The position numbers and the translations under genes were made by a program. Under the pieces are notes generated by a model. The model had not been told where the DNA came from and did not search any database. It saw only the letters and a program-made list of their open reading frames with translations. Source: Haliotis rubra (taxonomy: Eukaryota). From it: a stretch of DNA of 64,000 nt. This document shows, piece after piece, positions 717 through 49,128 of this stretch. The stretch is taken from the NCBI RefSeq assembly GCF_003918875.1, contig NW_025765736.1, positions 1,364,001-1,428,000 of the forward strand. Reading direction: 5' to 3'. Within the stretch, counting starts at the first letter, position 1. Every line of letters starts with the position of its first letter.

Positions 717-749
717 TTTATTGTAATCCTATTGAGGGATTTATCACAG
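717..749 (-). promoter_or_regulatory. Hes copy 1 3' UTR K-box (CTGTGATA) plus AATAAA
   Basis: Plus-strand tatcacag at 742-749 and tttatt at 717-722. Equivalent K-boxes at 7592-7597, 15117-15124, 23369-23376, 32053-32060 and 43176-43183. Confidence 0.7.
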
Positions 750-862
750 TTGTTATGGCAGCACTCAGGGGTCAGACGTTTGGTGGATCGATGAAATGAA
801 TATATATGTATATCAAACTGAATATAGACACATGTACAAAACAAGTCCATTTATGGAAGAGT

Positions 863-2482
863 TCACCAGGGTCTCCATGGTACCTGTTGTTCCGTCTTGA
901 TTTGTTGGGAGTAGGACCACGTGCTCTGAAGCCACGCCCTAACCCTCGAGTCTTTGTTGACCATTTCTGTTGGCACTTTACAGAGTTCTGAATCTGAGAA
1001 GCTGGAGGAGGGATAGTGAGCCGTTCCACGGCTGGACTGTTTGGTTATATCAGGAGAACCAGCATATCCACTGTCTGATAAACTGTTGTCTTCCTTCACA
1101 GGGGAAGTGTCCACTGTCCTACTCATGTACGCATGGGCAGCCGGATGTGGATATTGGGAATTGTAGGAAGGTACTGCACTCAGTCTCTCATAGCAGTTCC
1201 TTGTGTATGACGTCACAGCCTCTGTTGGTGACGTCACGGGTAAGTGCTGAATCTGTGTCATACGTCGAGAGATGTGTTTTCTCAGCTGACGATGTACATT
1301 GTCAGACACACCGGGAAGAGACTGGATGTAGGAGAGGATTTCTTCAGCACATTTGGAGAAGCCATGTTGGAATCTGACTTGAACAGCTTCTTTCACGTGT
1401 TGATGTGTTGTGTTGATCTTCCTGACATTCCTCAGATAATCTACAGTCGTCTCCAGGATCTCAGCCTTCTCCATTTTGTCAAAGTTGGGGTCCTGGCAAC
1501 ATAAGAAAACAATAAGTAACCAAGGCATACTTTAAGTAAAAATATCAGGAATTAAAACGTATTTTAGAATATTATAACCAATAACACACCCGCACTCATA
1601 CGCGCACACTGGAGTAAATATGTATACTATCCCAAGAAAGAAACGCATAGGCATTTTGTATTTTTTTAAATCTATTATTTACCAATTGTGTTCAAACAAT
1701 CGTCAAAATATGTAACGAAAGTGCTGATAACATGATTTTACACAATTGCACAAGTAAAAAATCGACTTTGCCTGAAAATGTTGATTTTGATTTCTTACAA
1801 GAATTAAAAAGGCATCGCCACAACGCAACAGAAATCACCTTCCAGTTGAAATTGTGCAGCAAAGAGCATGCACTGTCTAACTATAAAAATCTAGATTACT
1901 TTCGGAAATCGGCATCCGTTTTGAAGGAGTTTCAAGGTCAAATTGAATGCACAATAATAATAACAACTGAACTAGCATGTAATCATGTTAACTGTTTATT
2001 CTTATACAAGTAAAAAAATATTTTAACTTTTTTATATTTTCAACGGAAGTACTTACGTTTCGTTGTTGATCTCCGCACACGATGTCTTTGATGTCTAACA
2101 GACTCTGGTTTATTCTGGCCCGTCGCCGTTTTTCAGCCATTAGTTTTCGACCCTGGATGATAAAGAGATTGATTAATGATAAATAAAACTTAACATTAGT
2201 TCGCCCCAAATGTACAATGATTATTAGTTTTCAACGCTGAAGATAAATTACATCAGAAAAACAGTTTGCAAGTGAAGACTTGGGAGAGTGGAAACAACAT
2301 CAATTTCACATGAATATGAAATTAGCCACGTGCTTCGGTTGTAAACATGCACTTATAATTTACAATTTGTTAACCGTCGATTTGAAGTTTGCTAAGACAG
2401 GAGTGAATATTTAAGTCAGTCTTACCTTTCTTCGGCCCATGTATTCGCTATCAGATTCCATATTATGATAATAAGATTCCAT
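863..2482 (-). CDS. Hes: Hes/hairy-E(spl) family bHLH-Orange repressor, copy 1 (~260 aa; exons 2426-2482, 2057-2152, 863-1492)
   Basis: Spliced by hand using GT-AG phase-0 introns: MESYYHNMESDSEYMGRRK | GRKLMAEKRRRARINQSLLDIKDIVCGDQQRN | DPNFDKMEKAEILETTVDYLR...FQHGFSKCAEEILSYI (Orange)...WRPW*. The 96-nt middle exon is typical of Hes genes. Confidence 0.95.
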
Positions 2483-2815
2483 GAATGGGATGTGTTCAGT
2501 TCTGAGGGACAAGTTAGTGTGATGGAACGCTGCCTGCCCGACCCGCCTTTATACCCCCGACATTCCCCTACCCACGCTAATCTATGCACAGTTATGTTTT
2601 GACATCTGAATAGCCCGGTGCGATCCGATACACGCAGCCAATCAGCGCACGCCTTGGTAAGTGGTGGCACGCGCCGACTCGCGTTAAACTTCACCCGGAG
2701 ACAGATGTTCTTCTCATGACCCGACAGCGATGATATTCTTCAGGAGCAGAGGCCATCTTGCTTAGCGTGACACGAGGAGTTACGACAAAGAGCACCCGGC
2801 CTGTCAACAATCTGC
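2483..2815 (-). promoter_or_regulatory. Hes copy 1 5' UTR and proximal promoter
   Basis: TATAAA at 2548-2553 (minus), CCAAT at ~2638, TGGCACGCGCC at 2665-2675, Su(H)-like TTCTCATG at 2711-2718, N-box CACGAG at 2771-2776. Near-identical in all six copies. Confidence 0.8.
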
Positions 2816-4170
2816 CTCATTATCATCTTGTATTTCATTCAATGAAAGTTTATTTCCACCTATTTGAAGCGTGACACGAGCTGTGTCGCATTCCGTCGCC
2901 TACCGTTACCTGCACTGAAAATACGTCAAACACTCATGGCCATGTTATATACAAATCATAGTGTTATCTGAATGGCACAACACATACTAATCATTACTCT
3001 AATTGAAAGTAATCATTGCTCAACCTTTTTGTCATTTGGAACAGTATGAATTGTTCAAAAACTGGACGAAATAACAATTTGACATCCTTTTGCGAAATAT
3101 AACTATTGTATAAAAGCTGAGCAACAAGGAAGTTCTTTAATTAATAACTTATTTTGTCATCACGTTTTTAAATTTTCGGAAAGCATCATCGAAGACATTC
3201 TTTGAGCATATTTCGATTTGATAGTTACACAATGTAATGACTTCCTACTTGCTGACATGACACTTGATTATAATATTTATTTGTGATGTGTGTGTGTTAT
3301 GGGGTTTTGGGTTTTGGTTTTGGTTTTCTTTGGGTTTTTTATTGTTGTTGTTTATAGATTATATTTTCACGCTATAAAGTCGACAATAATAAGATTCTAA
3401 ATTAACTCGCGAAGTGTTTCTTTTGTATTCATATTTAACAAAATAGACATGTCCACCTTTTTTGCCTAAAACATGCCTTGATATTTTCACTTACCAATAG
3501 TAACGTTTCATTGTATGAATTATTATAATTGTATAGCAGGTCAAGGTCGGTTTCACGGTTATTCCGAGCTGTTTTACGTGTGATATAAAAGTCGGAAACT
3601 ACAAGAATGTTTGCTGAAGGACTTTCTTGCCAACACAACCATCAAACTGTCTGATGACCTTATCAGCAACATCCAATTATCATATGACAAAAGAGACTCG
3701 TTAGTGTCACAACAAGAACACAATGAGAGTCTTAATAGTCCTCGTTAGTAACACAAGGTTGATGCATAGTAAACGTCCGTCCCTGGCCAACAGGACCGTG
3801 TCAAGACACTTACTATACTCCAGACGGCGCCATGCTCATTATTTTTCCATCTAGCATAAGCTGTTTTTAAACATCACAACTAATAACTTATAAAAACACT
3901 TACACCCAATTAACACACACACACACCTCTTAAAAACACATTTCCTCCTAATGTCCTAGGAAATTAAAGTTTACATTTGAAAATTGGATTTGGGTGAAAA
4001 ATGCAAATATTATCAAAACGTCACTAGATGGAAACAGGCCCCCAAAAACTGTAAGATTATGGTTCATTTGTAAGACAAAATTATAATACTTGTATCTGAT
4101 CGCCCAATAACTATTCCTTGTTTTATGTGGAACTACCGTCACACATATGGGAATAAGGACACACACACAC

Positions 4171-4950: not shown

Positions 4951-6120
4951 ACACACACACATTACAACAGTACAAAACTGTTCTGATTCATTTTTACTGA
5001 TTCTACGATTGTTAATGTCTCAGATTAATTAATACACTCACGATCTTGTGAACACCCGGTGTCAACACTATGTTAAAAGGATTCATCAACATATGTACAT
5101 GATAAAATCGGAATGGTACAATCGATTCATTTTGTGGAGATTGTGTTTGGTTATTGAACTGACTTTGTTGCTTTCATTTGCATGTACACCGAAATAAAAT
5201 ACATATATTAAAATAAAATAAATATGAGACTTGTTATTATGTCAAAGATACATTCCTGTTCCTATTATTGATGTTAAGCAAATGTTTGTTCAACGAAAAA
5301 CAAGACAAGTGTGATTACCAAACTATATTTCATATTTAGGAAATACCTTTTGAAATAGAACATTGTGTTTTATATTGTTTTGGGTTTTTTATTTAACGTG
5401 ATCAATTCTAATTTATTATTATATATGTATTGACGGTTTGATTTTATTTCACCTGAATATTTGTTTAGTGGAAGTAAAAGTGAAGATGAGTCATATATTC
5501 TGTGTTCGTGTTCAAACAGAAAGAAACCGTAATTGATGAGTGATGATATATACACAAAATTTGTAGGTGTATTTTATCTCGCTCAGGATAATTAAGTATC
5601 CCAAAGACGCTGTTTTTGAAGGAAAATAAAGAATATATATCCAGACTAGGTAACTCTAAATTCTAGACCTTTAATGTTTTTCAATTTCTGAATTAAACGA
5701 ATCCAATCAACAACATTAACATGTAAATACATGCATATGTACATATCAAATCCCATTAAATCGATATGCAGGAAAGGACATATTGGAAAAGCGCCTCGGA
5801 ATCAGTATTGGCTGAGTGATGGTTTAGATTTTCCAAGTGATTTTGCAAATGGGAAAGTGGACAATACGAGATATTTGTAAACATCAGTTTCATAGGCGAC
5901 GCATGAAATTGAGGAAATAGCCACTTCAAAACGCGTTCCTTATGACAGGAAAAAAATATTGTACATCAGTAAACATAACAAACACGTCTATCAGCTGGTT
6001 AGTCCTCCCACGGGCCTTGTTCCGCCAGGGTGACACCTCAATGGAAATTGCAATTATCTACGATTACAGTATTGTATCGGCCCGCATCCCACCGCATGCC
6101 GTCATATTGATTCCGGGTGT

Positions 6121-6210
6121 ATCGCGATGTGACACTTCGCGTCGTCACGCGCTAGTAGCGTCACGTGACATACGGGCACCTGCGGTGATTAGTGTCACAA
6201 CTTCCGGTTA
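6121..6210. promoter_or_regulatory. Conserved distal module A (unit 1)
   Basis: TGTGACAC..GTCACGC..GTCACGTGACATACGGGCACCTGC.GTGATTAGTGTCA; recurs once per Hes unit amid unalignable flanks. Confidence 0.7.
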
Positions 6211-7730
6211 CCCCAGTTCGAGGCGTGCAAGCAGGCGCTCGGTGGACACCCAGCTCAATGAAACCACTATGTCAATATTTACAATATTTGTGGTTCCATT
6301 TGTGTGTGAATTATGAAGGAATCATATTGCTTTCATGGACATTTTCGGGTGGATATTATAGCGCCTTTTTTCTGCCAAGTTTCCCATTACCCACAAGCGA
6401 TTGTGTTTCGGGGGGAAAGAGAGACGAGTTCATATCTTATCATTATTACCTGTATATGGGTATTTATAGAGCGCTATAGTCCATCCCGTTTACATGCATG
6501 CTCAAAGCGCATATATCTATTCATAAATAATGGGTTGTATGCATCCATATGTATTATCTTCCAAGAATTTATATTTTATATGTTTACACGTTTTTATTTT
6601 ATCCTGTATTATCTGAAACTGCGGGAGACATTTAGATCGTATTGTAGCGCCATTAACATTTTATTTTTGTGTGTTTTGTACGAGAACACGTCCCGAGAAC
6701 GTCCGTGCCCCGAACTTCATGAAACTATTTGAAATATGTTATGTAACACAATAGAATGAAATGGCGAAGCACCTGAGCGATAATGGTTCAAGAACAGTCA
6801 TTGTGCTCATGAAGATAATCAAACCTGGGATTGAGTATGAAACACTCTACCTATGCATCCCTGTAGACTAGAGAAAGAAACTATTGGAATCTGTACCCAT
6901 TCGTTATATTTGATTTCGCAGCGACAGGTTCGTGAAATCTAAAAGACCCGGTGCTTTTTATCAACGTTGTTTGAGAAACTGTAACTTGGAATCGAAAGAA
7001 CCATCATACGTAACAGACGATTGCAGAAATAAATTGCGCTAAACTGCCTGGCAAAATGTATCCACTTCCAGTCTTAGAAAACTTATGCTCAGTATTCGTT
7101 TACCAGGATAGCAGTGTAACGAATAATACTGAGCCTAGGTTTACTTAGACTGTATCCACTTTAACACTGAATTTGACAAAACCGAAAATAAATGTTGTTA
7201 GACAAAACAAAATCCGTATGAAATACATCTCCATCTGATAACTATTTCTTGTTTGTGTTACTTTCGCCAAACGTGTGTGTGGTCTTTCTTTTGCTCGACA
7301 ATATTTTGACAAAATGTTTACACATTTGATCCAGCTGAGGTGCTGCAAATATTATACTGTTTTCCGTAGTATGTGTATTTAGTGTGGTATACACCACTTT
7401 CGCAACATGTCCAATCAATCTGTTTAAAATTGCATTATGCAACCGAAATACGGCATTAGCGAAACCAAAGTAAGACGACGACAAACTATCGACGACAGTT
7501 TTATTCCGGTTATCCACTGAATGGACCAAGTCTGCAATAAACTAAACATGAGACGTTTGTAAATAATTCATTTATTTATATATTTATATTCATCACATTG
7601 TGTATTATACCACAGACAATATATATGAATGTTTATATATAGAATAAGCACTGTACGATGCGTGTTTTGAATACTTATACACGTATATAACTGTACACGA
7701 CAAACAAGTCTATGTTATACATGGAGCCGC

Positions 7731-8924
7731 TCACCAGGGCCTCCATGGAACCTGTTGTTCCGTCTTGATTTGTTGGGAGTAAGACCACGTGCTCTGGAGC
7801 CACGCCCTAACTCTCGAGTCATCAAAGTTTTTATGGATTCTGCTTGACTCGATTTTACAAAGTTCTGAATCTGAGAGATTGGAAGGGTGATAGTGTCCAG
7901 TTCTGTGGGTGGACTGTTTGGTTATATCAGGAGAACCAGCATATCCACTGTCTGAGAAACTGTTGTCTTCCTTCACAGGGGAAGTGTCCACTCTCCCGCT
8001 CATGTACGCATGTGCAGCCGGATGTGGATACTGGGAATTGTGGGAAGGTTCTGCACTCAGTCTCTCATAGCAGTTCCTTGTGTATGACGTCGTATCTTCT
8101 GTTGATGACGTCACGGGCACCTGCTGAATGTGTGTCATACGTCGAGAGATGTGTTTTCTCAGCTGACGATGTACATTGTCCGACACTCCCGGCACAGACT
8201 GGATGTAGGAGAGGATTTCTTCAGCACATTTGGAGAAGCCATGTTGGAATCTGGCTTGAACTGCTTCTTTCACGTGTTGATGTGTTGTGTTGATCTTCCT
8301 GACATTCCTCAGATAATCTACAGTCGTCTCCAGAATCTCAGCCTTCTCCATCTTGTCATAGTTGGGATCCTGGAAAATTATAAAATAACATGAAATTAAG
8401 AGATTGAATTGCTAGGTGTAAATTGAATGCACAATGTGACTAAACTAGCAGGTTTATCATGTTAACTGTTTATTCTTATACAAGTAAAAAAATATTTTAA
8501 CTTTTTTTATATTTTCAACGGAAGTACTTACGTTTCGTTGTTGAGCTTCACATACGATGTCTTTGATTTCTGTCAGACTCTGGTTGATTCTGGCTCGTCG
8601 CCGTTTTTCAGCCATTAGTTTTCGACCCTGAAGAAAAACACATCAGAATGTAACGAAAAATTGAAGGTACACACAATGAAAGTTACAGATGTGAAGGTTA
8701 CTGTTATGAAGTTGACAAAGCAGTGACTTTATGCTTCAAAAACGACTCTATTCCCATTTTACCATGAATATTCAAACTAGCCACGTGTCTCAGATGTAAA
8801 CAGGTTCAGGTAATGTACAGGTTGTTAACAGTCTGTATGAAACCTATCACAGAAGACTGCTGCTTACCTTTCTTCGGCCCATATATTCACTCTCTGATTC
8901 CAGGTTGCTGAGATATGATTCCAT
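7731..8924 (-). CDS. Hes: Hes family bHLH-Orange repressor, copy 2 (~263 aa; exons 8868-8924, 8532-8627, 7731-8369)
   Basis: MESYLSNLESESEYMGRRK | GRKLMAEKRRRARINQSLTEIKDIVCEAQQRN | DPNYDKMEKAEILE...WRPW*. Splice sites are canonical and exon lengths are multiples of 3. Confidence 0.95.
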
Positions 8925-9255
8925 GACTGAGGTATGTTCAGCTGTGAGAGACAAGTTAGTGTGATGGAACGCTGCCTCTCCGACCCGCCTTTATACCCCC
9001 CGACATTCCCCTACCCACGCTAATGTATGCACAGTTATGTTTTGACATCTGAATAGCCCGGCGCGATCCGATACACGCAGCCAATCAGCGCACGCCTGGG
9101 TAAGTGGTGGCACGCGCCGGCTCGCGTTAAACTTCACCCGGAGACAGATGTTCTTCTCACGAATCGACAGGGATGATCTTCTCCAGGGGCAGAGGCCATC
9201 ATGTTTGGCGTGACACGAGGAGTTACGTGGCCGAGCACCCGGCCTGTCAACTGTC
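8925..9255 (-). promoter_or_regulatory. Hes copy 2 proximal promoter
   Basis: Same block; TGGCACGCGCC at 9108-9118; consensus CSL/Su(H) site TTCTCACG at 9154-9161. Confidence 0.8.
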
Positions 9256-12634: not shown

Positions 12635-12960
12635 TCAATTTCCCCGTCTCATTGAGTGAAAAAACTCCATTAGTGTCAACACCTCACAACACTGTCTGTT
12701 GTAAACACCAGGATATATCACAGATCATTATGACGTCACACAGAGATCTCTGACGTAACGTCATTGTTCACTGTCACCCATCCAGTGATGGAAACTGTTT
12801 GTAATGGTCAGTCTGGTGAAGAACCCCTCTGGGCTGGACAAAACAGCTGATTGAGAATAATTGGCTGACAAGGTATCAAAAATTACACATGCTGTGTTTT
12901 GTTCCAAGTTAAGCCTGTTTGGACACATTTACAATGTGTGGATACTTTCACACGTGGACG
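12635..12960. promoter_or_regulatory. Conserved distal module B (CRE/Sox), unit 2
   Basis: TGACGTCA at 12731-12738, TGACGTAA, CATTGTT, CAGCTG; paralogs in units 3, 5 and 6. Confidence 0.65.
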
Positions 12961-13129
12961 AAACCGGGGTGAAGGTTGACAAGACTTGTTGTGGAATGTC
13001 TCAGAAATAGATATAACTGGATATTGTGGATTCTGGATTTACCTAGTTGAGTGAAAAGAACGATTTTTTTATGTTTACCCAACTCTGCATTAGCATCCGA
13101 CCATGTGCATTTTCCCACTCTTTGTAGAG

Positions 13130-15261: not shown

Positions 15262-16524
15262 TTACCAGGGTCTCCATGGAACCTGTTGTTCTGTCTGAAT
15301 CTGCTGTGAGTAGGACCACGTGCTCTGGAGCCACGATCTAACTCTCGAGTCTTTGTCAACCATTTCTGTTGGCACTTTACAGAGCACTGAATCTGAAAAG
15401 CTGGATGAGGGATAGTGTCCAGTTCTGTGGGTGGACTGTTTGGTAATATCAGGAGAACCAGCATATCCACTGTCTGAGAAGCTGTTGTCCTCCTTCACAG
15501 GAGAAGTGGCCATATATGCATATGCAGTCGGATGTGAATGCTGGGTATTGTGGGAAGGTTCTGCACTCAGTCTCTCATAGCAATTTCTTGTGTTTGACGT
15601 CACAGCCTCTGTTGTCAAGGGCACCTGTTGAATATGTGTCATACATCGAGAGATGTGTTTTCTCAGCTGACGATGTACATTGTCCGACACTCCCGGCAGA
15701 GACTGGATGTAGGAGAAGATTTCTTCAGCACATTTGGGAGAAGCCATGTTGGAATCTGGCTTGAACTGCTTCTTTCACGTGTTGATGTGTTGTGTTGATC
15801 TTCCTGACATTCCTCAGATAATCTACAGTCGTCTCCAGAATCTCAGCCTTCTCCATCTTGTCATAGTTGGGGTCCTGGGAAAATAAGAGATCAATAAGTA
15901 ACCAAGGCATACAACATGAAATAGAAGAAATTTTTAAAAACTCGTAGAAAACGTGAGCTCCTGTTGTGAACATTGAATTATGATTAGATTAGTTTTAAAA
16001 ATCAAGAAATTAAAACATTGCATTGCTACGTGTACATTTAAAACATATACTAACAACTAACCATGTAAACTGTGTAATTTTATACAAAATAAAATGAGGT
16101 TTTTTTCATATTTTAAGCTGATGTACTTACGTTTCGTTGTCGAGCGCCACATACGATGCCTTTGATTTCTGTCAGACTTTGGTTGATTCTGGCTCGCCGC
16201 CGTTTTTCAGCCATTACTTTTCGACCCTGCAGAAAAACATATCAGAATGTAACAACAAATCGAAGGAATCACAATGAAAATTTCAGGTTACTGTTATGAA
16301 GTTGACAAAGCAGAGATTTTATGTTCTAAAACCGACTGGGACACAATCTATTCCCATGTTACCATGAATATTCAAATTAGCCACGTGTCTCAGATGTAAA
16401 CAGGTTCAGGTAGCGTACAGGTTGTTAACAATCTATTTAAAACTTATCATAGAAGACTGATGCTTACCTTTCTTCGGCCCATATATTCACTCTCTGATTC
16501 CAGGTTGTAAAAGTGAGATTCCAT
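15262..16524 (-). pseudogene. Hes: Hes copy 3, frameshifted (exons 16468-16524, 16131-16226, 15262-15874); pseudogene, truncated bHLH-only allele, or sequencing error
   Basis: Extra G at 15736-15738 (catttGGGagaag versus catttGGagaag in the other five copies) gives ...FQHGFSQMC* with the stop at 15725-15727. The downstream frame stays open to WRPW, and promoter and splice sites are intact. Confidence 0.85.
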
Positions 16525-18979: not shown

Positions 18980-19255
18980 CGTGTCAACACTCTGTGTGTC
19001 ATAAACACGAGGGTATATCACAGATCATTATGACGTCACACAGAGATCTGTGACGTAACGTCATTGTTCACTGTCACCCATCCAGTGATGGAGACTGTTT
19101 GTAATGGTCAGTCTGGTAAAGAACCCCTCTGGGCTGGACAAAACAGCTGATTGAGAATAATTGGCTGACAAGGTATCAAAAATTACACATGCTGTGTTTA
19201 TTCCAAGTTAAGCCTGTTTGGACACATTTACAAGATGGGGACCCTCCCACACGTA
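18980..19255. promoter_or_regulatory. Conserved distal module B, unit 3
   Basis: Near-identical to 12675-12950; TTCCCACG at 18949-18956 adjacent. Confidence 0.65.
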
Positions 19256-20080
19256 CAGAACAGTTGTGAAAGTTAGTTGTGGCCTTTGACCACATATGTA
19301 GGCTGGAATTTACCGTGTGAAAATGGACTCATACTTGAAACTGGGGAAGGTACAGAAAACATTATAAGACGTTTTGCAGATGATAGTCAATACATATAAT
19401 GATCTGACAATAAAAATGCTATCAAACAGGATTAAATCTCGTAATCCAAAACAGAATTTATAAAGAATGATTATGGAGTCAAGTTAGTTCAATTGTAAAA
19501 GCAGTTATGAATTTTTCTCTGACACGACTGGTCATTTAGTTAGCATATCAGCGAAGTACTTTGAAGGGTTACTCTGGTGATAAGCTTTTGTCGAGGAAAC
19601 CATTAGAACCAGTACACGTCTTTTATGTTGCCAATAAACAACTGTTGTCATAGCAACAAAACAATAATTAAACTATAATTAAAATAATTAAAACAATAAT
19701 TAAACTTTAAGCAATAATTAAACTATAATTAAAACAATAACTAAACTTTTGTCGAGGAAACCATTAGAACCAGTACACGTCTTTTAGGTTGCCAATAAAC
19801 TGTTGTCATAGCAACAAAATACAAACAAGAAAATACGTACTCATTTATTTACCCTATATTTACATTATAATTGATGACATTGATTGACATCTCCCTCACT
19901 TCCACTACCAGGTTTACACAGTTTGCGAAATAGATATGTCTAAAACATACTGATTTTAGAAAGACTAATTATGTTTACCCTGTCTCTGCACTAACAAGAA
20001 CATAACCATGGCCCAGCTCATTACTTGCGTTGTGATACCTTTGCGATCTGTCGACTGGAGAACATAAAAAGGAATATACA

Positions 20081-20736: not shown

Positions 20737-21180
20737 ATACCAAATTGACGGACAAATTGACAGCGTGAACACTAGATACAATTCGAAATGGCTCACTCGC
20801 ATATTGCCACCTGTCGAATACAGTGTTTCACACGATGTCCAGTCAGTTTGGTGAATAACTTCGTGACACTGACACCGTGTTGAAAACAATCGGTTTTTTT
20901 TTGTCACGTGTAATAACTGATTGTCCAGTCAACGCTCCGGACGTTGCAGGAACCATCTGCTGGGCACTGCGACCTTGTGCATCGGAATGCGACCACGTGC
21001 AGGTCCCCGCTGCTTGAAGAAAAGGTGGCGCCCCCTATCGGAATAATTAACGGTTTCCTTATGACCCGCAACTGACACTAACGACTTGGCCTTTCAGCAA
21101 CTACTTATGGGACAACTGATTGTAATTATCAGACAGTGCAGGTGATTATTTGACACCAAACTGTTATCATAATAATGTCA
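20737..21180 (-). promoter_or_regulatory. Conserved module C (extended), unit 3
   Basis: Minus-strand CCGATAGGGGGCGCCA at 21026-21041; the whole ~440 bp is an inverted copy of 27390-27820. Confidence 0.6.
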
Positions 21181-23470: not shown

Positions 23471-24646
23471 TTACCAGGGTCTCCATGGAACCTGTTGTTC
23501 TGTCTGAATCTGCTGTGAGTAGGACCACGTGCTCTGGAGCCACGATCTAACTCTCGAGTTTTTGTCAACCATTTCTGTTGGTACCTTACTGAGCACTGAA
23601 TCGGAAAAGCTGGATGAGGGATAGTGTCCAGTTCTGTGGGTGGGCTGTTTGGTAATATCAGGAGAACCAGCATATCCACTGTCCGAGAAACTGTTGTCTT
23701 CCTTCACAGGAGAAGTGCCCATGTACGCATGTGCAGCCGGATGTGGATACTGGGAAGTGTAGGAAGGTACCGAATGTAATCTATCTTCCATTGGTGACGT
23801 CACGGGTACCTGCTGAATATGTGTCATATGTCGAGAGATGTGTTTTCTCAGCTGACGATGTACATTGTCTGACACTCCCGGCAGAGACTGGATGTAGGAG
23901 AGGATTTCTTCAGCACATTTGGAGAAGCCATGTTGGAATCTGGCTTGAACTGCTTCTTTCACGTGTTGATGTGTTGTGTTGATCTTCCTGACATTCCTCA
24001 GATAATCTACAGTCGTCTCCAGAATCTCAGCCTTCTCCATTTTCTCAAAGTTGGGGTCCTGGGAAAATAAGAGATCAATAAGTAACTAAGGCATACAACA
24101 TGAAATAGAAGAAATGTTTAAAAACTCGTAGAGTTCCTGTTGTGAACATTGAATTAAAATTAAATGTAATTATTATTTCCTTAAGATTTATACAGCTAAA
24201 ACGCTAGAATTCCAGTTAGTGAAACATTGGCTAGCTACTTACATTTTGTTGATGTCCCGCACATACGATGCCTTTGATTTCTGACAGACTCTGGTTGATT
24301 CTGGCTCGTCGCCGTTTTTCAGCCATTAGTTTTCGACCCTGGAGGAAAAAAACACCAAAAATATAATATCATGTTTTCAGGTTTGCATACAATATTTCGG
24401 AGTATTTCGGGCATTGTGTATTCAATATTTCAGAGTATGAAAATGCATGTTATGAAAAAACTCCCGTTGAAAGTTTTGAAAAATGATGTAAATTCAAGGA
24501 ATATGCAACGAACCGCGTGTTTCAGTTGTAAACAAGCACAGTTCAGCTTCAGCATATGATATTTTTCATAACAGTAAACAAGTGCTTACCTTTCTTCGGC
24601 CCATATATTCACTCTCTGATTCCATGTTGTGAAAGTGAGATTCCAT
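23471..24646 (-). CDS. Hes: Hes family bHLH-Orange repressor, copy 4 (~246 aa; exons 24590-24646, 24243-24338, 23471-24058)
   Basis: MESHFHNMESESEYMGRRK | GRKLMAEKRRRARINQSLSEIKGIVCAGHQQN | DPNFEKMEKAEILE...WRPW*. Confidence 0.95.
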
Positions 24647-37749: not shown

Positions 37750-37972
37750 CAGTTAGATTGTCCGGACCAGCGAGACTCAACGCCGGAGAGGCCATTTACA
37801 GACAATCTTCATCACTGGATGGGTGGGCGTGAACAATGGTATTACGTCATTGTCTCAGTGTGACGTCACAGCAGTGTGTGATATATCCTTGTAGTGTTAT
37901 AATGACGGTAAGTGTCGTGGGGTGTTGACACTAATGGACTTACTCCGCTCTGTCGGACGGGGAAATCAACTA
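37750..37972. promoter_or_regulatory. Conserved distal module B, unit 5 (inverted)
   Basis: Reverse complement aligns to 48373-48600; TGACGTCA at 37861-37868. Confidence 0.6.
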
Positions 37973-39353
37973 AAGAGGTCTTCAACACTTCATTAGACAG
38001 TTATGGAGACGGGGACATTTGTTGATAGGGACAATTGGGGATGACTTGTAAATAAACGAGGTATCAGGGCCAACAAGTGTTCAATGCTTGTTTTATTTAT
38101 CTAGCGTCACAGAAGCGTAATATACAGTTGTCTATTGACCCTGTTGTAATTTGACACTGAAATATTTGTTGGGCTGGCATTGTCGTGGTTCCAATACGAC
38201 ACCTCATTAGACTGACATAAAGCTTTCACGTAAACTCAGCAACAGCGTTTGTAACACACAAATAAGAAACCGAATTTTTAAAGGCATATAAAAAATCCTA
38301 AGTGTTAATGTCCTTTATTCAAATTGTTTAAAAACGCAGTTTTCAATTCATATTGTCGTTTCAAGGACATATGAATCATATTTATGTTAATGTATTATAC
38401 AATAATATTACATTGCACGTGCATATATTTTATTAAAAAAAATTATTTAAATTTAAATACAGTATACATAGACTTTGACAGATGGAACATATTCTGAAGT
38501 CTTTGCAAGTATTTAATTATGTAGAGTTAGATATAGGTAAATCAGTCCCAAAACTACAATTGACGTGATGTAAACTGTAGGCAAAACGTAAGCATAGAAT
38601 ATTCAACAGTGATTTTTAATAGAAAATAGTTCCTTCTCAAAACTGGAAGAAACTCATTCATACTAATGGTTTCCAGTTTTTTAGTCGATGAAAATGCTTG
38701 TCTATGAAACTTAATATTTGACTGACATGGACATCAGAAAGATGACATTCAAACGAAATATCTGTTTTAAACACTTACGCAAGCAACACAAAATATTTAA
38801 ATACTCACAGATAAAGAATATATTTTTACTAAATTTACCCACATAACACCTGTGTGTTGAGTCAGAAATCAAAAAGACATGCACATGTTAATTGTAAAGT
38901 ATTTGCCATACATTTATGTTGTTGATTTGTCGACTGAAAGGGGAATGTTTTATGTGGGTTTCTACATCTCTACTGATGACATGATTGCGTTTATCAGTCG
39001 ATTCTGTCTTGAAGAGATACGTTTTGGACATTCTATCAAGCAATGATAATAGTTTTCAGTTGGTGAACCAAAATGAACTTGATAGCGATCTGGCATCCAT
39101 TGCCATGATAAACATTACTTCGGGAGACACTGCAGGTGGTGGTTTATTACCGAGGTGTCCATTATGAGCGGTGGGGACTGGTATCAGGTGGGGGGTGTCA
39201 TTCAAAACACACCTTGTTTTGGGGTTTGTTGTCACAAATGACTAATCGTGTTCAAAGGGTACGGAAATTAAAAAAAGAGGAATTTACCTGCAACAGTATA
39301 TTCTGCTCATTTCTACTGTATGCCTTGACTTTAGGTTTATCAAACTTTGGGTT

Positions 39354-39478: not shown

Positions 39479-40794
39479 TGTTGAAAATAGGCATGCATCT
39501 TACGGCCATTGTATTTGACTATGATTATCTCGGACACAGTCAAATACATTTTTGTGTTTAAAAACAAGTTCAAATGTTGACATCTTGGCTCAACGCCATT
39601 TGAAAATAGCGGCTCCGAATACAAATTAACCCTTTACATATGTACAGTGAGTAAGGGACTTAAAATTTAAAATTTCATTGGCATTTCAGACATATCGTGA
39701 ATATGAAAGCTATATATTGATAAATATCATTCTTAACGATAATAATACTTGTCAACAAAGGACAGTAAAATAACTAGAATATCACATATTTATATTAAAA
39801 ACAAACAAGTAACATTTCAGGTTAATGGTGAAGGAGTACGTATATACTCAGAGATGTTGTGATCCTAACAGTAAAGAAGAAGGGGGGTGGACAAAATCCC
39901 AACTGGACAAAATGCCATAGCACCAAATTTCTTTGCACTTTAGACAAAATCCCACACCAAACTAACAAACAAAGGACAAAATCCTATTTATTTTAATCAT
40001 GTTTTTTTTATGACAGAGGCCAGTGAGCTAAGTATATAGTAGAATGTTTTGATGTTTTCACGAATGAGTTAAAAGAGAGTTATCAATAAAACTCTCTTCC
40101 TTATATGTGTATCACTTCCAAATGCCATTCAGTTCTATAACATGGCATAAAATGCACACACCTTTGACAAAATATCAGAGATGGCTGGGTCATAAGTAAA
40201 AAACGAGCGACAATTTACGAAACCGTATTTTGCATATACAGAAAGTGAGGCAGTTCCCACCTAAGACTAACATTTCATCACAGAAATGATGTATATATAT
40301 TAACCTAGAATATAATTAGAAGCGACAAAACCCTTTCCACATTCATAAGAAATCTCTGCTAAAAGCAGAGTCGATTGTGACTGTCATGAGCATATACTTG
40401 TTTCAGCCTTACAGACGCATGATGTTGTTTGTAAACAAATTGCGTCTGGACCAGACAATCCAGTGGTTGTCACCATGCGATACGATGAAAGAGCATGTGT
40501 TTATGAATCACTATGAAATAGTGATGATACCAGGTGTTCGCGAAAAGATGGTTATAATCGGAACAGGGCTAAGGTAATCAAGATTCGTCTCTGATTGGGT
40601 CTGAAAATACATGTGGCATTTTGGTGAATTTTACAATACTGTGATGCTGACGTATTCCATATATTGGGTGGTAAACCACAAAGAACGTTCAGTTCCCCTC
40701 CAAAAGTGTTTACTCACTGGAATAAAGCCGGCGACGAATACATCAGTGTCACCTTCAAATAAAACATTTTGCCGATGTGTTGCATTTCAAAACA

Positions 40795-41123
40795 CAATAC
40801 CCCAGCCAACATTCCTCCACTCTCACAGTCATCAGCCCGCTATAAAACCCCGTTGATGATGTTGTGACACGCCGGAACAATGACAGTGACGGATGGCGGG
40901 CACGAGGTGTCAAGTCGACAAGCGCCATCGACGCCCATCGTTATTGGATACATCCACTCAACCATGGGCAACACAACCACCATTAGCTCGGAGCGCTCCT
41001 CTCGGTAAAATGTCTCCCGTTATCTCGCGTGTGTACTATCGTCACGTGTGCCGTGATAAGAGGGCAAGTGCACTGATTTAGTGTCACGTGATCCTATTAG
41101 GGGAAGTCCCGTGGGGAATCCCC
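40795..41123. promoter_or_regulatory. Module E plus diverged module A (unit 5)
   Basis: ~170 bp almost identical to 48848-49015, followed by GGGCAAGTGCACTGATTTAGTGTCA and two kB-like sites. Confidence 0.6.
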
Positions 41124-42853: not shown

Positions 42854-43215
42854 GATATCAAACTTAAGTCTATAGTCTCCATATGTACGAGCGGTTCGAA
42901 CCGGCATTCTCGGCTGGAACGCACAAACTACTGGATTAGCTGTTTCCTCTGTGACTCTGTGAGAAACCTAGAGAAAAGATATGTAAGGTTTCAGCAATTT
43001 TCCTGCAATATCACGGCGGGGGACACCAGAAATGGGATTCACACATTTTACCCATGTGGGGCATTGAACCCGGGGCTTCTGTGTGACGAAGAAACGCTTT
43101 ATCTACTGGGCTACCCCACCGCCCTCAAAATATATATAGAACAATAAATCAGTGTAGCGTTAGATTTTATTCAGGTATCACAGATTATGGCACTTTATAG
43201 AGACAGCAACACTCA

Positions 43216-44189
43216 TCACCAGGGCCTCCATGGAACTTGTTGCTCCGTCTTGATTTGTTGGGAGTAAGACCACGTGCTCTGGAGCCACGCCCTAACTCTC
43301 GAGTCATCAAAGTTTTTATGGATTCTGCTTGACTCCATTTTACAGAGTTCTGAATCTGAGAGATTGGAAGGGTGATAGTGTCCAGTTCTGTGGGTGGACT
43401 GTTTGGTAATATCAGGAGAACCAGCATATCCACTGTCTGAGAAGCTGGTGTCTTCCTTCACAGGGGAAGTGTCCACTGTCCCGCTCATGTACGCATGTGC
43501 AGCCGGATGTGGATACTGGGAATTGTGGGAAGGTACTGGATTCAATCGTTCGTAGCACTGACTCGTGTATGACATCACATCCTCTGTTGATGACGTCACG
43601 GGCACCTGCTGAATGTGTGTCATACGTCGAGAGATGTGTTTTCTCAGCTGACGATGTACATTGTCCGACACTCCCGGCACAGACTGGATGTAGGAGAGGA
43701 TTTCTTCAGCACATTTGGAGAAGCCATGTTGGAATTTGGCTTGAACTGCTTCTTTCACGTGTTGATGTGTTGTGTTGATCTTCCTGACATTCCTCAGATA
43801 ATCTACAGTCGTCTCCAGAATCTCAGCCTTCTCCATCTTGTCATAGTTGGGGTCCTGGGGAAAATGGAAGAATAACTATAAGTACATGTTGTGTGGAGGG
43901 TATACAATCATAGTAACTGTAAAAATATGACTCCTATAGTAATTGTATTTAATTTTTTATATAATAAACCAAAATACTTAAGTGAAATTATCAAGGTATT
44001 AAGAAATATTACACAATATTTGACTTTAAAAGTTCCACTTACATTTTGTTGTTGCGCCCCACAGACAATTCTTTTGATGTCCAATAAACTCTGGTTGATT
44101 CTGGCTCGTCGGCGCTTTTCTGCCATCAATTTTCGGTCCTTTCTCCCTCCCATATTGTCCGATTCCGTGTATCTGTCGAATGATTCCAT
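43216..44189 (-). CDS. Hes: Hes family bHLH-Orange repressor, copy 6 (~261 aa; two exons, 44043-44189 and 43216-43854; intron 1 absent)
   Basis: MESFDRYTESDNMGGRKDRKLMAEKRRRARINQSLLDIKRIVCGAQQQN is continuous, followed by one GT-AG intron, then DPNYDKMEKAEILE...WRPW*. Confidence 0.95.
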
Positions 44190-44516
44190 GACTGAGGTGT
44201 GTTCAGCTCTGAGAGGCAAGTTGGTGTGATGGAACGCTGCCTCTCCGACCCGCTTTTATACCCCCCGACATTCCCCTACCCACGCTAATCTATGCACAGT
44301 TATGTTTTGACATCTGAATTGCCCGGCGCGATCCGATACACGCAGCCAATCAGCGCACGCCTTGGTAAGTGGTGGCACGCGCCGGCTCGCGTTAAACTTC
44401 ACCAGGAGACAGATGTTCTTCTCATGACCCGACAACGATGATATTCGTCAGGAGCACCGGCCATCTTGCTTAGCGTGACACGAGGAGTTACGTGGACGAG
44501 CACCCGACCTTTCAAC
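44190..44516 (-). promoter_or_regulatory. Hes copy 6 proximal promoter
   Basis: Same block; TGGCACGCGCC at 44373-44383. Confidence 0.8.
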
Positions 44517-45440
44517 AAGTATTATTTGTAAATTTCTACTGAGAACGTGTCCCGTTGTGCCGTCACTGAGAATCTAACGTTCCGACATGCCGTTATTTTC
44601 ACCTTTGGTTTGAGACTTAACGGAAAGTGCGCGAAACGCATCTTCCTATTTTTAAGTAGATGAAAACATTTACCATTGACAAAGTTAAGCTTTTACATCA
44701 ATTTCAACCACGACATACGAGTGAAATTTTGTTGTAGGCTGCCGTCAGCTCTCAGCAAACTCTGACTTAAAAAATTATAGAAAAATATATAGAAAGGGTC
44801 AATTTTCGTGTGTTACTTGACCGCGCAGTGCAACCGTTTGTATGCATGAGACATACATTATTATTATTAAAAATTATTTTTACAGGCATACTGTTCACAA
44901 TCATCGTCGGATAAATTGTAATTTGTATACTACTTATAATATAATTTGTTTGGAGAACTGTTGCCACATTACGTTATCTTTTAGGCCAATGAAATACGTT
45001 TAAACGAAAAAAGAAATTGCTAATTTCGTGAGTAGGATGGTCAGAACGAAACTGACACAGAAAAGCCTCTAATGACAAAGTTTATGACTTTGGAGAAAGT
45101 TTTACTGCGGTAGCAAATACTTGGAAAATCTTGTCTGTAGACATTTCATTACTATTTGATGTACTGAAGGTACTGACATATTTACATGCCAGAGTAAAGC
45201 CTTAAAAGATTACTACGTCACTGATATAACTACGCCCATATTAAATCCATATTGTTTTGAACTTCCCCTTCATCCACTCCTTTCTGTTTATCAAAAGACC
45301 TATATGAAGAAAGTCTTTCACAGGTTCTGAATTTCCCATCTTACTGGGGCTCCTTTTGTCAAATTAAAATAACATATTTGTTTATATCAAAAGTATATTG
45401 ATGCAGAGACTAAGCACAAGTCTACCCTTATTATTCTATG

Positions 45441-45442
<2 letters not shown>

Positions 45443-45491: not shown

Positions 45492-45492
<1 letters not shown>

Positions 45493-47873: not shown

Positions 47874-48039
47874 CTGACTGACTGAGTTTGGTTTTACGCC
47901 GCTTTTAGCAATATTCCAGCAACATCACGGCGGGGGACACCAGAAATGGGCTTCACACATTGTGCCCATGTGGGGATTCGAACCCGGGTCTTCGGCGTGA
48001 CGAGCCAACGCTTTAACCATTAGGCTACCCCACCGCCCC
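47874..48039 (-). mobile_element. tRNA-derived SINE family 1
   Basis: Full length; 13-bp TSD AGCATCGTTTACA. Further copies or fragments at ~34160, 37140, 49285, 59228, 62245 and 63062. Confidence 0.9.
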
Positions 48040-48372
48040 AGCATCGTTTACATGCTACATAGAGTCAAGGAAAACAGTAAAAAACAAAATCATCAGAAAT
48101 AATGCTCATATACGAGTGGGTATAAAATAATGCCCACTGAATTGATCAAGCAGTGACACAGGGGTTTAGGTACCTGTATGCTATATGGTATTTTTCCAAA
48201 TGCTTCAAATTAAACAAATCTGTATAAATACTTATATAAGCCTCGACAATCAGGCGCCCGCCTGGGATAAGTGGAAGTGTCCTGGTGTCGCTGATAGTGT
48301 TACAAGTAAACACTTGACTTAAACTTATTTAATCCAGTGTTTATAACTATTCTTGTATGAATGAAACGCGTG

Positions 48373-48600
48373 TGGTTGATCGCCCCGTCCGACACAGCGG
48401 AGTAAGTCCATTAGTGTCAACACCCTCAACACTTGCCGCCATTATAACACTACAAGGGTACCACATATCATTATGACGTCACGCTGAGATCCGTAACGTA
48501 ACGTCATTGTTCACCGCCACCCATCCAGTGATGGAGATTGTTTGTAATGGTCAGTCGGGTGAAGAACCCGCCAGGCTGGACAAAACAGCTGATAGTTAAC
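48373..48600. promoter_or_regulatory. Conserved distal module B, unit 6
   Basis: CCATTAGTGTCAACAC...TGACGTCA (48474-48481)...CATTGTTCAC...CCATCCAGTGATG. Confidence 0.65.
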
Positions 48601-48847
48601 AAATTCGATGAAACGAGATTGAGTAATTGACAACTATATTACAACAGAAAAGAAGAAAGAGCTTGTACATTTTATCATCCCTGATGAAACGACTACGGTC
48701 ATTTTATTGCAGCTGAATGTAGCAAGCCTTGGTTTTTATTCGCCCAGACAAAATTCTACTCGCCTCGGGCCGAGCGTTAATTTTTATCACTGAAAGGGGT
48801 GCGTTTCAGTGCCACAGCTAAGATCCACAAGTTGAAATGTTAGTCTC

Positions 48848-49128
48848 AATACCCCAGCAAACATTCCTCCACTCTCACTGTCATCATCCCGCTATAAAAC
48901 CCCGTTGATGATGTTGTGACACGCAGGAACAATGACAGTGACGGATGGCGGGCACGAGGTGTCAAGTCGACATGCGCCATCGACGCCTACCGTTATTCGA
49001 TATATTCACTCAGCCAGGTATTTTAACTTCCATTAGCTCAAAGCGCCCCTATCTGAAATGGCCTCCTGGTATCACGTGACACTTGGGTCCCCACGCTCAA
49101 CGGGCACCTGCACTGATTTAGTGTCATG
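48848..49128. promoter_or_regulatory. Module E plus diverged module A (unit 6)
   Basis: Paralog of 40795-41092; GCACCTGC at 49104-49111. Confidence 0.6.

What the first reader, a model, noticed from the sequence alone, without database searches (positions are those of the whole stretch)
717..49128. A six-gene Hes array that looks like an independently built Enhancer-of-split-type complex
Seen: six same-strand Hes paralogs at 7-11 kb spacing. Each duplicated together with a promoter, up to five distal conserved modules and a 3' UTR K-box, while the rest of the spacers are unalignable. Known: the arthropod E(spl) complex combines clustered bHLH-Orange-WRPW genes with CSL and proneural input, autorepression and K-box miRNA control. 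Inference: this intron-bearing, proline-less cluster in a probable mollusc uses the same multi-layer logic and seems tuned for high-dose, short-lived repressor pulses. The array may continue left of the window.
Basis: partly seen in the sequence, partly recalled or inferred. Interest (0 to 1): 0.85.

Follow-up and report, generated by a model that had tools for sequence, protein, structure and literature searches.

The report
Seven-gene abalone Hes tandem array
The window holds six of seven tandem copies of a gastropod-specific Hes repressor gene in the blacklip abalone; such arrays are a known kind, but each copy keeps an ancient promoter and a microRNA seed-match site that also sits behind the Hes genes of six other molluscs sampled.

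Summary
The window is Haliotis rubra. It carries six minus-strand bHLH-Orange-WRPW genes with start codons 6.4-10.5 kb apart. A seventh copy lies about 8.7 kb to the left. H. asinina has the same seven genes in the same order.

Deviations from the finding:
- g3 carries a 1-base frameshift that the reads could not confirm or dismiss.
- g6 lacks intron 1.
- g2 lacks the K box.

Five families of spacer modules are real: they coincide with peaks of at least 90% identity between the two species. Other shared spacer blocks are high-copy transposons.

The array arose independently of arthropod E(spl). It expanded a proline-less gastropod Hes subfamily that is a single gene beside a CPTP-like (GLTP-domain) gene in Gigantopelta.

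Several "E(spl)-like" layers were inherited, not newly built. The promoter layout is shared with Gigantopelta. A K-box match lies within 800 nt of the stop codon in six of seven other mollusc Hes genes.

Hes-type sites (CACGTG, CACGCG) are enriched about 2.5-3.4-fold. CSL sites are not enriched, and no paired site exists.

Exon 3 shows gene conversion. Expression, Notch dependence and pulsing remain untested.

Tandem Hes clusters in molluscs are already published. I rate this a new member of a known kind, of moderate interest.

The parts
863..2482 (-). g1: Hes gene, 3 exons (2426-2482, 2057-2152, 863-1492), 260 aa; identical to P0007
7731..8924 (-). g2: Hes gene, 3 exons (8868-8924, 8532-8627, 7731-8369), 263 aa. 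Exon 3 is 95% identical to that of g6. No K box.
15262..16524 (-). g3: Hes gene, 3 exons (16468-16524, 16131-16226, 15262-15874). One extra base in the GGG run at 15736-15738 shifts the frame inside the Orange domain. The frame is otherwise open as far as WRPW.
23471..24646 (-). g4: Hes gene, 3 exons (24590-24646, 24243-24338, 23471-24058), 246 aa; identical to P0019
32085..33703 (-). g5: Hes gene, 3 exons (33653-33703, 33121-33216, 32085-32699), 253 aa
43216..44189 (-). g6: Hes gene, 2 exons (44043-44189, 43216-43854), 261 aa. Intron 1 is precisely absent; the H. asinina orthologue is likewise compact (959-bp gene) with the fused GGRKDRK junction.
2483..2823 (-). Core promoter of g1. Equivalent blocks: 8925-9251, 16525-16811, 24647-24970, 33704-33943, 44190-44518. 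Motifs in order: CAGATG E-box, class C site GGCGCGTGCC, CCAAT (ATTGG), second CAGATG, GCGTGGG, then TATAAA 71 nt before the ATG.
742..749 (-). K box CTGTGATA in the g1 3' UTR. Others: 15117-15124 (g3), 23369-23376 (g4), 32053-32060 (g5), 43176-43183 (g6). In each case the site starts 12-34 nt upstream of the start of the first poly(A) signal.
6118..6233 (-). Module M-E. Other copies: 13773-13887, 22319-22427, 29170-29243. Core blocks TGACACTAATCAC, CAGGTGCCCGTATG and TCACGTGAC are invariant in 8 of 8 copies across the two species. Located 3.3-5.8 kb upstream of g1-g4.
40795..41027 (-). Module M-A. Other copies: 48844-49076 and L001:4664-4820. About 170 bp are nearly invariant. Located upstream of g5, g6 and g0.
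40318..40550 (-). Module M-B. Other copy: L001:5610-5842.
18989..19274 (-). Module M-C. Other copies: 12643-12977, 48384-48645, 37728-37977 (inverted) and L001:6161-6437. Contains a near-invariant TGACGTCA (CRE-type) palindrome.
20738..21178 (.). Module M-D. Other copies: 13086-13280, 27392-27819 (inverted) and 35658-35808 (inverted). Its conserved core includes a CTCF-like CCGATAGGGGGCGCC.
55683..56174 (-). Flank: large exon of a CPTP/GLTP gene. A second copy lies at 61433-61924. A GLTP-domain gene also neighbours the single Gigantopelta Hes gene.

Best explanation
What it is (shown). This is a seven-member tandem array, six members of which lie in the window, of a proline-less, gastropod-specific subfamily of Hes (hairy/E(spl)-type bHLH-Orange-WRPW) repressor genes in Haliotis rubra.

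How it arose (shown). It grew by tandem duplication of a single ancestral gene that lay next to a CPTP-like (GLTP-domain) gene. That state survives in Gigantopelta. The expansion happened before H. rubra and H. asinina split.

What each unit kept (shown). Each unit retains the ancestral compact core promoter: E-boxes, a class C Hes site, CCAAT and TATA. Each also retains a very short 3' UTR with one 8-mer match to the miR-2 seed (the K box). The distal modules were partitioned among the units.

How it is maintained (shown). All seven orthologue pairs are under purifying selection (omega 0.13-0.30). Exon 3, and probably the promoter, undergo gene conversion.

How it most likely works (inferred). 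The proteins recruit Groucho through WRPW. They bind the enriched, conserved CACGCG and CACGTG sites in their own promoters, first introns and modules. This would give auto- and cross-repression across the array. miR-2-family microRNAs would trim the transcripts. Unit-specific enhancers would decide where each copy is switched on. Notch/CSL input, if present, would act through single sites that differ between copies, not through the paired sites typical of E(spl).
For: - Identity and domains.
- Gene models.
- Seventh gene.
- Collinear seven-gene array in H. asinina.
- All array genes form one clade inside a gastropod clade (SH-aLRT 99) with Gigantopelta, Aplysia, Lymnaea and Bradybaena.
- The basic region RKG[RK]KL[LM]AEK is shared by that clade, whereas 128 of 146 other representatives (134 of which have a residue in that column) have Pro.
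- A single Gigantopelta Hes gene lies next to a GLTP-domain gene.
- The promoter's motif order is shared with Gigantopelta.
- Cross-species conserved peaks coincide with the modules.
- CACGTG occurs 47 times against 13.9 expected and CACGCG 23 times against 9.4 (0 of 100 shuffles reach either count). In the spacers, 15 of 25 CACGTG and 15 of 22 CACGCG sites are conserved in H. asinina.
- The K box is present in 12 of 14 3' UTRs. A K-box match lies within 800 nt of the stop in six of seven other mollusc Hes genes.
- Omega is 0.13-0.30, and paralogue dS (0.09-0.40) is no higher than orthologue dS (0.23-0.39).
- An AU test rejects the positional-orthologue clades for g2 (p = 6e-5) and g6 (p = 1e-3) in exon 3.
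Against: - No expression data were obtained. The runs laid were contigs, with no clear RNA signal.
- DNA binding by a Leu-for-Pro basic region is untested.
- CACGTG and CACGCG are also bound by other bHLH and bHLH-PAS factors, so their enrichment does not prove autoregulation.
- miR-2 was not shown to be present or expressed in Haliotis here. It is inferred from PMC3384581, which places the origin of mir-2 before the protostome ancestor.
- 12 of the 47 CACGTG sites are coding duplicates.
- The clades tested by AU were named after the tree had been seen.
Confidence: 0.7

Rival explanations
1. It is a true functional analogue of the E(spl) complex. Most copies would be direct, rapid CSL/Notch targets co-activated by proneural bHLH factors.
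For: - A canonical CGTGAGAA lies about 255 nt before the ATG in five of seven H. asinina promoters and in H. rubra g2.
- Four cross-species conserved YGTGRGAA sites sit in or beside M-E (29131-29138), beside M-C (18949-18956), in the g2 promoter (9154-9161) and in M-A (L001:4500).
- E-boxes are invariant or nearly so: CAGATG twice in the promoter and GCAGGTG in M-E.
- The K box is present, as in E(spl).
Against: - YGTGRGAA is not enriched: 14 sites against 9.7 expected, and 12 of 100 shuffles reach 14.
- There is no paired Su(H) site anywhere in either species.
- The promoter site reads CATGAGAA in four H. rubra copies and is absent from g3 and g5.
- The 700 bp upstream of the Gigantopelta gene hold no RTGRGAA.
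- No candidate Bearded-class gene was seen.
Confidence: 0.3
2. It is a Notch-independent 'hairy-like' battery. The copies would be pre-pattern or timing repressors driven only by their modular enhancers (CRE, homeodomain and E-box inputs), with copy number serving sub-functionalisation rather than dosage.
For: - The nearest named relatives are annotated 'protein hairy' or 'hairy-like'.
- Modules are partitioned among the units: A, B and C upstream of g0, g5 and g6; E, D and C upstream of g1-g4.
- M-C carries a near-invariant TGACGTCA, and M-D carries TAATTA-type sites.
- CSL motif evidence is weak.
Against: - Some canonical single Su(H) sites are conserved between species.
- The near-identical core promoters, and the gene conversion, argue for a shared rather than a divergent output.
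- There are no expression data.
Confidence: 0.35
3. It is an assembly or haplotype artefact: collapsed or falsely duplicated copies of one or two genes.
For: Exon 3 of g2 and g6 are 95% identical. The Illumina-derived contig at single-copy depth differs from the window in the g3 introns.
Against: - An independent chromosome-level H. asinina assembly has the same seven genes in the same order, with alignable orthologous spacers.
- Paralogous spacers and introns are mostly unalignable.
- Flanking unique sequence has single-copy depth.
Confidence: 0.01

Closest known systems
Lineage-specific tandem Hes clusters of lophotrochozoans (Gazave et al. 2014, PMC4172395; Bao et al. 2017, PMC5381572)
   Same: These are same-family paralogues made by local tandem duplication. 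Hes clusters were reported in all 14 genomes surveyed, and explicitly in gastropod, bivalve, brachiopod and annelid genomes.
   Different: This case has seven same-strand copies of one proline-less gastropod subfamily, with 1:1 positional orthologues between two Haliotis species. It also shows gene conversion and has a mapped regulatory anatomy. None of that is described in the passages of those papers that I read.
Arthropod Enhancer of split complex (Dearden 2015, PMC4575448; PMC3261227)
   Same: Both have clustered bHLH-Orange-WRPW repressor genes, K-box motifs in short 3' UTRs, Hes-type sites near the promoters and E-boxes.
   Different: This array is not orthologous to the complex. No Bearded-class genes were seen, introns are present, and there is no paired Su(H) site. 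No Brd box occurs and no GY box occurs in the array's 3' UTRs. The basic region lacks proline.
Human HES-1 (PDB 2MH3) and canonical Hes genes
   Same: The bHLH aligns over residues 17-76 (E = 2e-10). The Orange domain and WRPW are present. From my own knowledge, not tested here, the two introns lie at the positions of HES1 introns 1 and 2.
   Different: The array has Leu/Val where HES-1 has the basic-region proline. The loop is shorter, and the third Hes intron is absent. Haliotis keeps separate canonical Pro-containing Hes genes elsewhere (P0173).
Drosophila K-box / miR-2-family regulation of Notch targets (Lai et al. 1998 and Lai et al. 2005, cited in PMC4575448; PMC3384581)
   Same: The motif is the same 8-mer, cTGTGATa, complementary to the miR-2 seed, and it lies in the 3' UTRs of Hes-type genes.
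   Different: Here it is seen in molluscs, as a single site just upstream of the poly(A) signal. No microRNA data or repression data exist for this case.

Membership tests
Hes (hairy/E(spl)) bHLH-Orange repressors | bHLH domain (PF00010) | tested here: met
   The g6 exon alone scores 19.4 bits. The full proteins carry a precomputed PF00010 hit. HES-1 structure 2MH3 matches at E = 2e-10.
Hes (hairy/E(spl)) bHLH-Orange repressors | Orange domain (PF07527) | tested here: met
   31.2 bits against a cut-off of 25.3.
Hes (hairy/E(spl)) bHLH-Orange repressors | C-terminal WRPW | tested here: met
   All six copies, and g0, end in WRPW followed by a stop codon.
Hes (hairy/E(spl)) bHLH-Orange repressors | Proline in the basic region | tested here: not met
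   The array has Leu (Val in g3) where 128 of 146 other representatives (134 with a residue in that column) have Pro. The substitution is shared with Gigantopelta, Aplysia, Lymnaea and Bradybaena.
Arthropod E(spl) complex | Descent from the insect/crustacean E(spl) bHLH genes | tested here: not met
   The array genes form one clade within a gastropod clade (SH-aLRT 99). The complex is restricted to insects and crustaceans (PMC4575448). No Drosophila sequence was identified among the tree's rows.
Arthropod E(spl) complex | Bearded-class genes interspersed with the bHLH genes | tested here: inconclusive
   The spacer ORFs tested have no Pfam hit, and the spacer conservation runs in several frames and on both strands. 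Very small Brd-like ORFs cannot be excluded.
Arthropod E(spl) complex | Paired Su(H) sites, with proneural E-boxes, in the promoters | tested here: not met
   No head-to-head TGRGAA pair with a 10-24 nt spacer exists in either species. Single sites only were found. E-boxes are present.
Arthropod E(spl) complex | K box, Brd box and GY box in the 3' UTRs | tested here: inconclusive
   The K box is present in 12 of 14 UTRs. No Brd box and no GY box occurs in any of them.
Arthropod E(spl) complex | Transcriptional dependence on Notch | not testable with these tools
   This needs inhibitor or knock-down experiments.
miR-2-family (K-box) targets | Conserved seed match in the 3' UTR | tested here: met
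   The 8-mer is conserved in six of seven orthologue pairs. A 7-8-mer lies within 800 nt of the stop in six of seven other mollusc Hes genes. For the first five, the product of position probabilities is about 1e-9; this figure was computed post hoc.
miR-2-family (K-box) targets | Presence of the microRNA, and repression by it | not tested
   mir-2 is inferred to pre-date the protostome ancestor (PMC3384581). No Haliotis small-RNA data were examined.

The most novel reading that the evidence does not exclude
The K-box link between the miR-2 family and Hes genes may not be an arthropod E(spl) speciality. It may instead be an old protostome regulatory connection, shared at least by molluscs and arthropods, that the abalone array simply inherited, together with a core-promoter layout fixed since before Vetigastropoda and Neomphalina split. 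The resemblance to E(spl) would then be deep homology of regulatory links sitting on top of independent gene duplications.
Probability: 0.4. Interest if true: 0.65.

Novelty: new member of a known kind. Interest (0 to 1): 0.45.

Why it matters
Independent tandem Hes arrays are common. What is rarely available is a case where the regulatory parts can be read directly from two species and an outgroup. This locus offers that.

It has seven copies with an almost frozen core promoter. Five enhancer-like module families are partitioned among the units. Gene conversion acts on the coding exon. One copy (g2) has naturally lost the K box, which makes it a built-in control.

If the K-box link extends across molluscs, as the seven other Hes genes sampled here suggest, microRNA control of Hes genes by the miR-2 family may be far older than the fly complex in which it was discovered.

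The locus also raises a question about DNA binding. A Hes subfamily without the hallmark basic-region proline is here surrounded by CACGCG and CACGTG sites.

Tried and rejected
- The read test of the g3 frameshift was inconclusive. Every contig across 15736 lacks the extra base. However, those contigs have depth 804 against about 140-160 for the flanks, and they carry the paralogues' letters at 15699 and 15717. They are therefore collapsed multi-copy contigs, not g3 itself.
- The same call gave no usable RNA evidence. The 'RNA?' run covers only the conserved part of exon 3 plus traces over intron 1 and the promoter.
- Two abalone and whelk microRNA papers held nothing on miR-2 in Haliotis.
- Rfam and tRNA scans of the window found nothing.
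- Overall Su(H) enrichment was rejected, and so was a paired Su(H) site.
- Conserved spacer ORFs as possible Brd-like genes were rejected. They have no Pfam hit, and conservation runs in all frames.
- The Haliotis promoter and modules gave no nucleotide BLAST match in the Gigantopelta or Aplysia loci beyond exons and the CPTP-like gene. The shared promoter layout was found only by reading the motifs.
- I did not pursue motif guesses such as GCM-like, EGR-like, TEAD-like or XRE-like sites. They are recall-based leads only.
Full report
**Observation.** The window carries six minus-strand genes. Each encodes a bHLH basic region (RK[LV]MAEKRRRARIN), a helix 2 (KMEKAEIL), an Orange domain and a terminal WRPW. 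All splice sites are GT..AG, and the models give proteins of 246-263 aa. g1-g5 have three exons. In g6, exons 1 and 2 are fused exactly at the intron 1 position. Start codons lie at 2482, 8924, 16524, 24646, 33703 and 44189, so the spacing is 6.4-10.5 kb. Pfam finds Hairy_orange (31.2 bits against a cut-off of 25.3) and HLH. The closest solved structure is human HES-1.

g3 has one extra base in a short run at 15736-15738. It shifts the frame inside the Orange domain, and the downstream frame stays open as far as WRPW.

**Organism and extent.** g2's exons 2-3 (residues 20-263) are identical to the Haliotis rubra protein P0001. That annotated isoform carries g3's first exon instead of g2's own. 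g1 and g4 are identical to annotated H. rubra proteins. A further H. rubra paralogue, P0015 (274 aa), lies on the same contig about 8.7 kb to the left of the window, downstream of g1. The array therefore has seven members, which I call g6 to g0 in the direction of transcription.

H. asinina chromosome CM074541.1 has seven genes in the same order and on one strand. Its g6 orthologue is a compact 959-bp gene with the same fused GGRKDRK junction, and its g3 is intact. Orthologous spacers align along their whole length (HSPs of 72-85% identity). This rules out an assembly artefact and places all the duplications before the two species split.

**Origin.** I searched 1.8 billion representative proteins with a profile of the family. 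Full-length similarity was found in only a handful of sequences; for the remaining hits only the bHLH-Orange region aligns. In a tree of 170 sequences, all Haliotis array genes form one tight clade. That clade sits inside a 29-row clade (SH-aLRT 99) that also holds Gigantopelta 'hairy-like', Aplysia 'protein hairy', Lymnaea and Bradybaena.

This clade shares the proline-less basic region, whereas 128 of 146 other representatives (134 with a residue in that column) have the proline. The loss of the proline is therefore an old trait of a gastropod subfamily, not a novelty of the array. Haliotis also keeps canonical Pro-containing Hes genes elsewhere.

In Gigantopelta the gene is single within ±10 kb and sits next to a GLTP-domain gene orthologous to the window's two CPTP-like copies. 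It also points to an expansion in the Haliotis lineage. The array is thus unrelated by descent to arthropod E(spl), which is restricted to insects and crustaceans and is defined by the linkage of bHLH genes with Bearded-class genes (PMC4575448).

**Promoter.** A block of 230-340 bp ending at each ATG is 91-93% identical among H. rubra paralogues. Across the 14 promoters of the two species, the following are invariant or nearly so:
- an E-box (CATCTG)
- the class C site GGCGCGTGCC
- ATTGG (CCAAT)
- a second E-box (CAGATG)
- GCGTGGG
- TATAAA, 71 nt before the ATG

The single Gigantopelta gene has the same elements in the same order and at similar spacing, except that its second E-box position reads CAAGTG. 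The constraint is therefore ancient, and homogenisation alone does not explain it.

Homogenisation does also occur. About 255 nt before the ATG, five H. asinina promoters and H. rubra g2 read CGTGAGAA, a canonical Su(H) site. Four H. rubra promoters share CATGAGAA instead. A species-specific change shared by paralogues is the signature of gene conversion.

**Distal modules.** Self-comparison of the window and comparison with the left flank define five families in collinear order:
- M-A, M-B and M-C lie upstream of g0 and g5. g6 has M-A and M-C.
- M-E, M-D and M-C lie upstream of g3 and g2.
- M-E and M-D lie upstream of g4.
- M-E alone lies upstream of g1.

This split matches the two types of N-terminal exon. 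In pairwise spacer alignments between the species, overall column identity is 53-60%. Peaks of at least 90% identity coincide with these modules, with the promoters and with two of the K-box regions.

The M-E core is invariant in all eight copies. It combines CAGGTG (GCAGGTG in seven of the eight), TCACGTGA and CGCGTG-type motifs. M-C holds a near-invariant TGACGTCA. M-D holds a CTCF-like motif and occurs in both orientations.

Other shared spacer blocks are transposons. They occur in both orientations and outside the array. Two of them have read depths of 10^5-10^7, against about 150 for neighbouring unique sequence including M-E.

**Motif statistics.**
- CACGTG: 47 sites against 13.9 expected. 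CACGCG: 23 against 9.4. In both cases 0 of 100 shuffles reach the observed count.
- 43 of the 47 CACGTG sites lie inside the array, and 12 of them are coding duplicates.
- In the spacers, 15 of 25 CACGTG sites and 15 of 22 CACGCG sites are conserved in H. asinina.
- Intron 1 of g1, g2, g3 and g5 also holds a CACGTG.
- YGTGRGAA is not enriched: 14 sites against 9.7 expected, and 12 of 100 shuffles reach 14.
- Four of nine spacer YGTGRGAA sites are conserved, all within conserved peaks.
- No head-to-head pair of Su(H) sites exists in either species.

On motif evidence alone, auto- or cross-regulation by Hes-type proteins is the best-supported layer. CSL input is the weakest.

**K box.** CTGTGATA occurs 12 times in the window against 2.5 expected, and 11 of the 12 are on the gene strand. 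It lies 22-138 nt after the stop codon and starts 12-34 nt before the start of the first poly(A) signal. This holds for six of the seven genes in both species. Among the copies aligned (g1-g6), the flanking sequence is unalignable except between g3 and g4. g2 lacks the motif in both species.

I then looked behind the stop codon of seven other mollusc Hes genes:
- Solemya: CTGTGATA at +43
- Pecten: CTGTGAT at +62
- Patella: TGTGATA at +88
- Gigantopelta: TGTGATA at +92
- Lymnaea: CTGTGATA at +541, 54 nt before a poly(A) signal
- Aplysia: CTGTGATA at +798, 28 nt before a poly(A) signal
- The canonical H. rubra Hes gene: only a site at +1039

Locus-wide densities are 0.07-0.26 per kb per strand. 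For the first five loci, the product of the probabilities of a site lying that close is about 1e-9. That figure was computed post hoc. The K box was therefore inherited by the array, not acquired by it. mir-2 is thought to pre-date the protostome ancestor, and its family members share one seed (PMC3384581). I did not verify the microRNA in Haliotis.

**Selection and conversion.**
- Exon 3 of orthologue pairs gives dS 0.23-0.39 and omega 0.13-0.30. For g3, omega is 0.25.
- Paralogue dS within H. rubra (0.09-0.40) is no higher than orthologue dS, although the duplications are older than the species split. This indicates concerted evolution.
- In exon 3 trees, g2 and g6 group by species (support 100/99 for the H. 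asinina pair).
- An AU test rejects the positional-orthologue clades for g2 (p = 6e-5) and for g6 (p = 1e-3). These groups were named after the tree had been seen.
- g3 and g4 show the same tendency without significance. g0 and g5 group by orthology.
- g2 and g6 lie 35 kb apart.

**g3.** The omega value shows no relaxation of constraint, and the H. asinina orthologue is intact. The read test was inconclusive because the contigs across the site are collapsed multi-copy contigs. In the g3 introns, the only contig at single-copy depth differs from the window by several substitutions and indels. Local assembly error is therefore plausible. I put the odds of a real, recent frameshift against an assembly error at roughly even.

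**Mechanism (inferred).**
- WRPW proteins of this family recruit Groucho. This is established knowledge of the family.
- The DNA-contact residues of the basic region are retained apart from the proline.
- The conserved class B and class C sites in the promoters, first introns and modules fit negative auto- and cross-regulation.
- The genes are compact (1.0-1.6 kb). Their inferred 5' UTRs are about 40 nt and their 3' UTRs about 60-180 nt, each with one seed match. This is compatible with fast turnover, but nothing here measures it.
- The DSGYAGSP motif is nearly invariant in Haliotis and absent from Gigantopelta.

**Comparison and novelty.** Independent tandem Hes duplications are described as the rule in animals. 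Clusters are explicitly reported in gastropods, bivalves, brachiopods and annelids (PMC4172395, PMC5381572, PMC8166818, PMC8429573). The genes here are already annotated. The array is thus a new member of a known kind.

What goes beyond the passages I read:
- the 1:1 seven-gene orthology between two Haliotis species
- gene conversion in exon 3, between g2 and g6 35 kb apart
- the core-promoter layout conserved with Gigantopelta
- the five module families
- the proline-less gastropod subfamily
- the K box behind the Hes genes of six of seven other molluscs sampled

The scan's earlier notes on this window agree with what I found on three points: the proline, the promoter without a paired Su(H) site, and the CTCF-like motif.

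Noticed in passing
L006:13402+92; L008:12949+88; L009:7680+43; L010:8119+541; L007:13005+798; L012:6462+62: A K-box (miR-2 seed) match lies behind the stop codon of Hes genes in Gigantopelta, Patella, Solemya, Lymnaea, Aplysia and Pecten. In Aplysia and Lymnaea it sits 28 and 54 nt before a poly(A) signal. The three proline-less orthologues share an AAAGC-N5-6-TGTGATA context.
   Followed up: partly
window 15736-15738: g3 has one extra base (GGG where the paralogues have GG), which shifts the frame in the Orange domain. The contigs of all four runs lack it, but they are collapsed paralogue contigs. The H. asinina orthologue is intact and omega is 0.25.
   Followed up: partly
window 16468-16524 and 8532-8627: The annotated H. 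rubra protein P0001 ('isoform X2') joins the first exon of g3 to exons 2-3 of g2. This implies either a 7.8 kb splice across g3 or an annotation artefact.
   Followed up: no
window 44043-44189: Intron 1 is precisely absent from g6. The H. asinina orthologue is likewise compact (959-bp gene) and, like the H. rufescens protein P0002, carries the fused GGRKDRK junction. The loss therefore appears to be old.
   Followed up: partly
window 7731-8389 and 43216-43876: Exon 3 of g2 and g6 are 95% identical although the genes lie 35 kb apart. The same pair groups by species in H. asinina, which indicates long-range gene conversion in both lineages.
   Followed up: yes
window 14860-15023 and 14246-14361, with many other copies: Two short dispersed repeats reach contig depths of 10^6-10^7 and 10^5-10^6, against about 150 for unique sequence. 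They are very high-copy SINE- or MITE-like elements. ARAGORN finds no tRNA in them.
   Followed up: partly
window 15873-16490: In run X1, the only contig at single-copy depth differs from the window by 10 substitutions and 23 gap positions in the g3 introns, including an 11-base deletion at 16016 and a 10-base insertion at 16039. This reflects either a second haplotype or local assembly error.
   Followed up: no
window 13086-13280, 20738-21178, 27392-27819, 35658-35808: Module M-D keeps a CTCF-like CCGATAGGGGGCGCC and an ACCCGCAT (GCM-type) motif. Its orientation flips between the g5-g4 and g4-g3 spacers. It is 88-94% identical between the two species.
   Followed up: partly
window 55683-56174 and 61433-61924; 52143-52442: There are two tandem CPTP/GLTP gene copies, 86% identical over about 620 bp. 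Between them and the array lies a FLYWCH zinc-finger ORF, probably from a transposon.
   Followed up: no
L011:6619+410: The canonical, Pro-containing H. rubra Hes gene has a GY-box heptamer (GTCTTCC) 410 nt after its stop codon. It has no K box before +1039.
   Followed up: no
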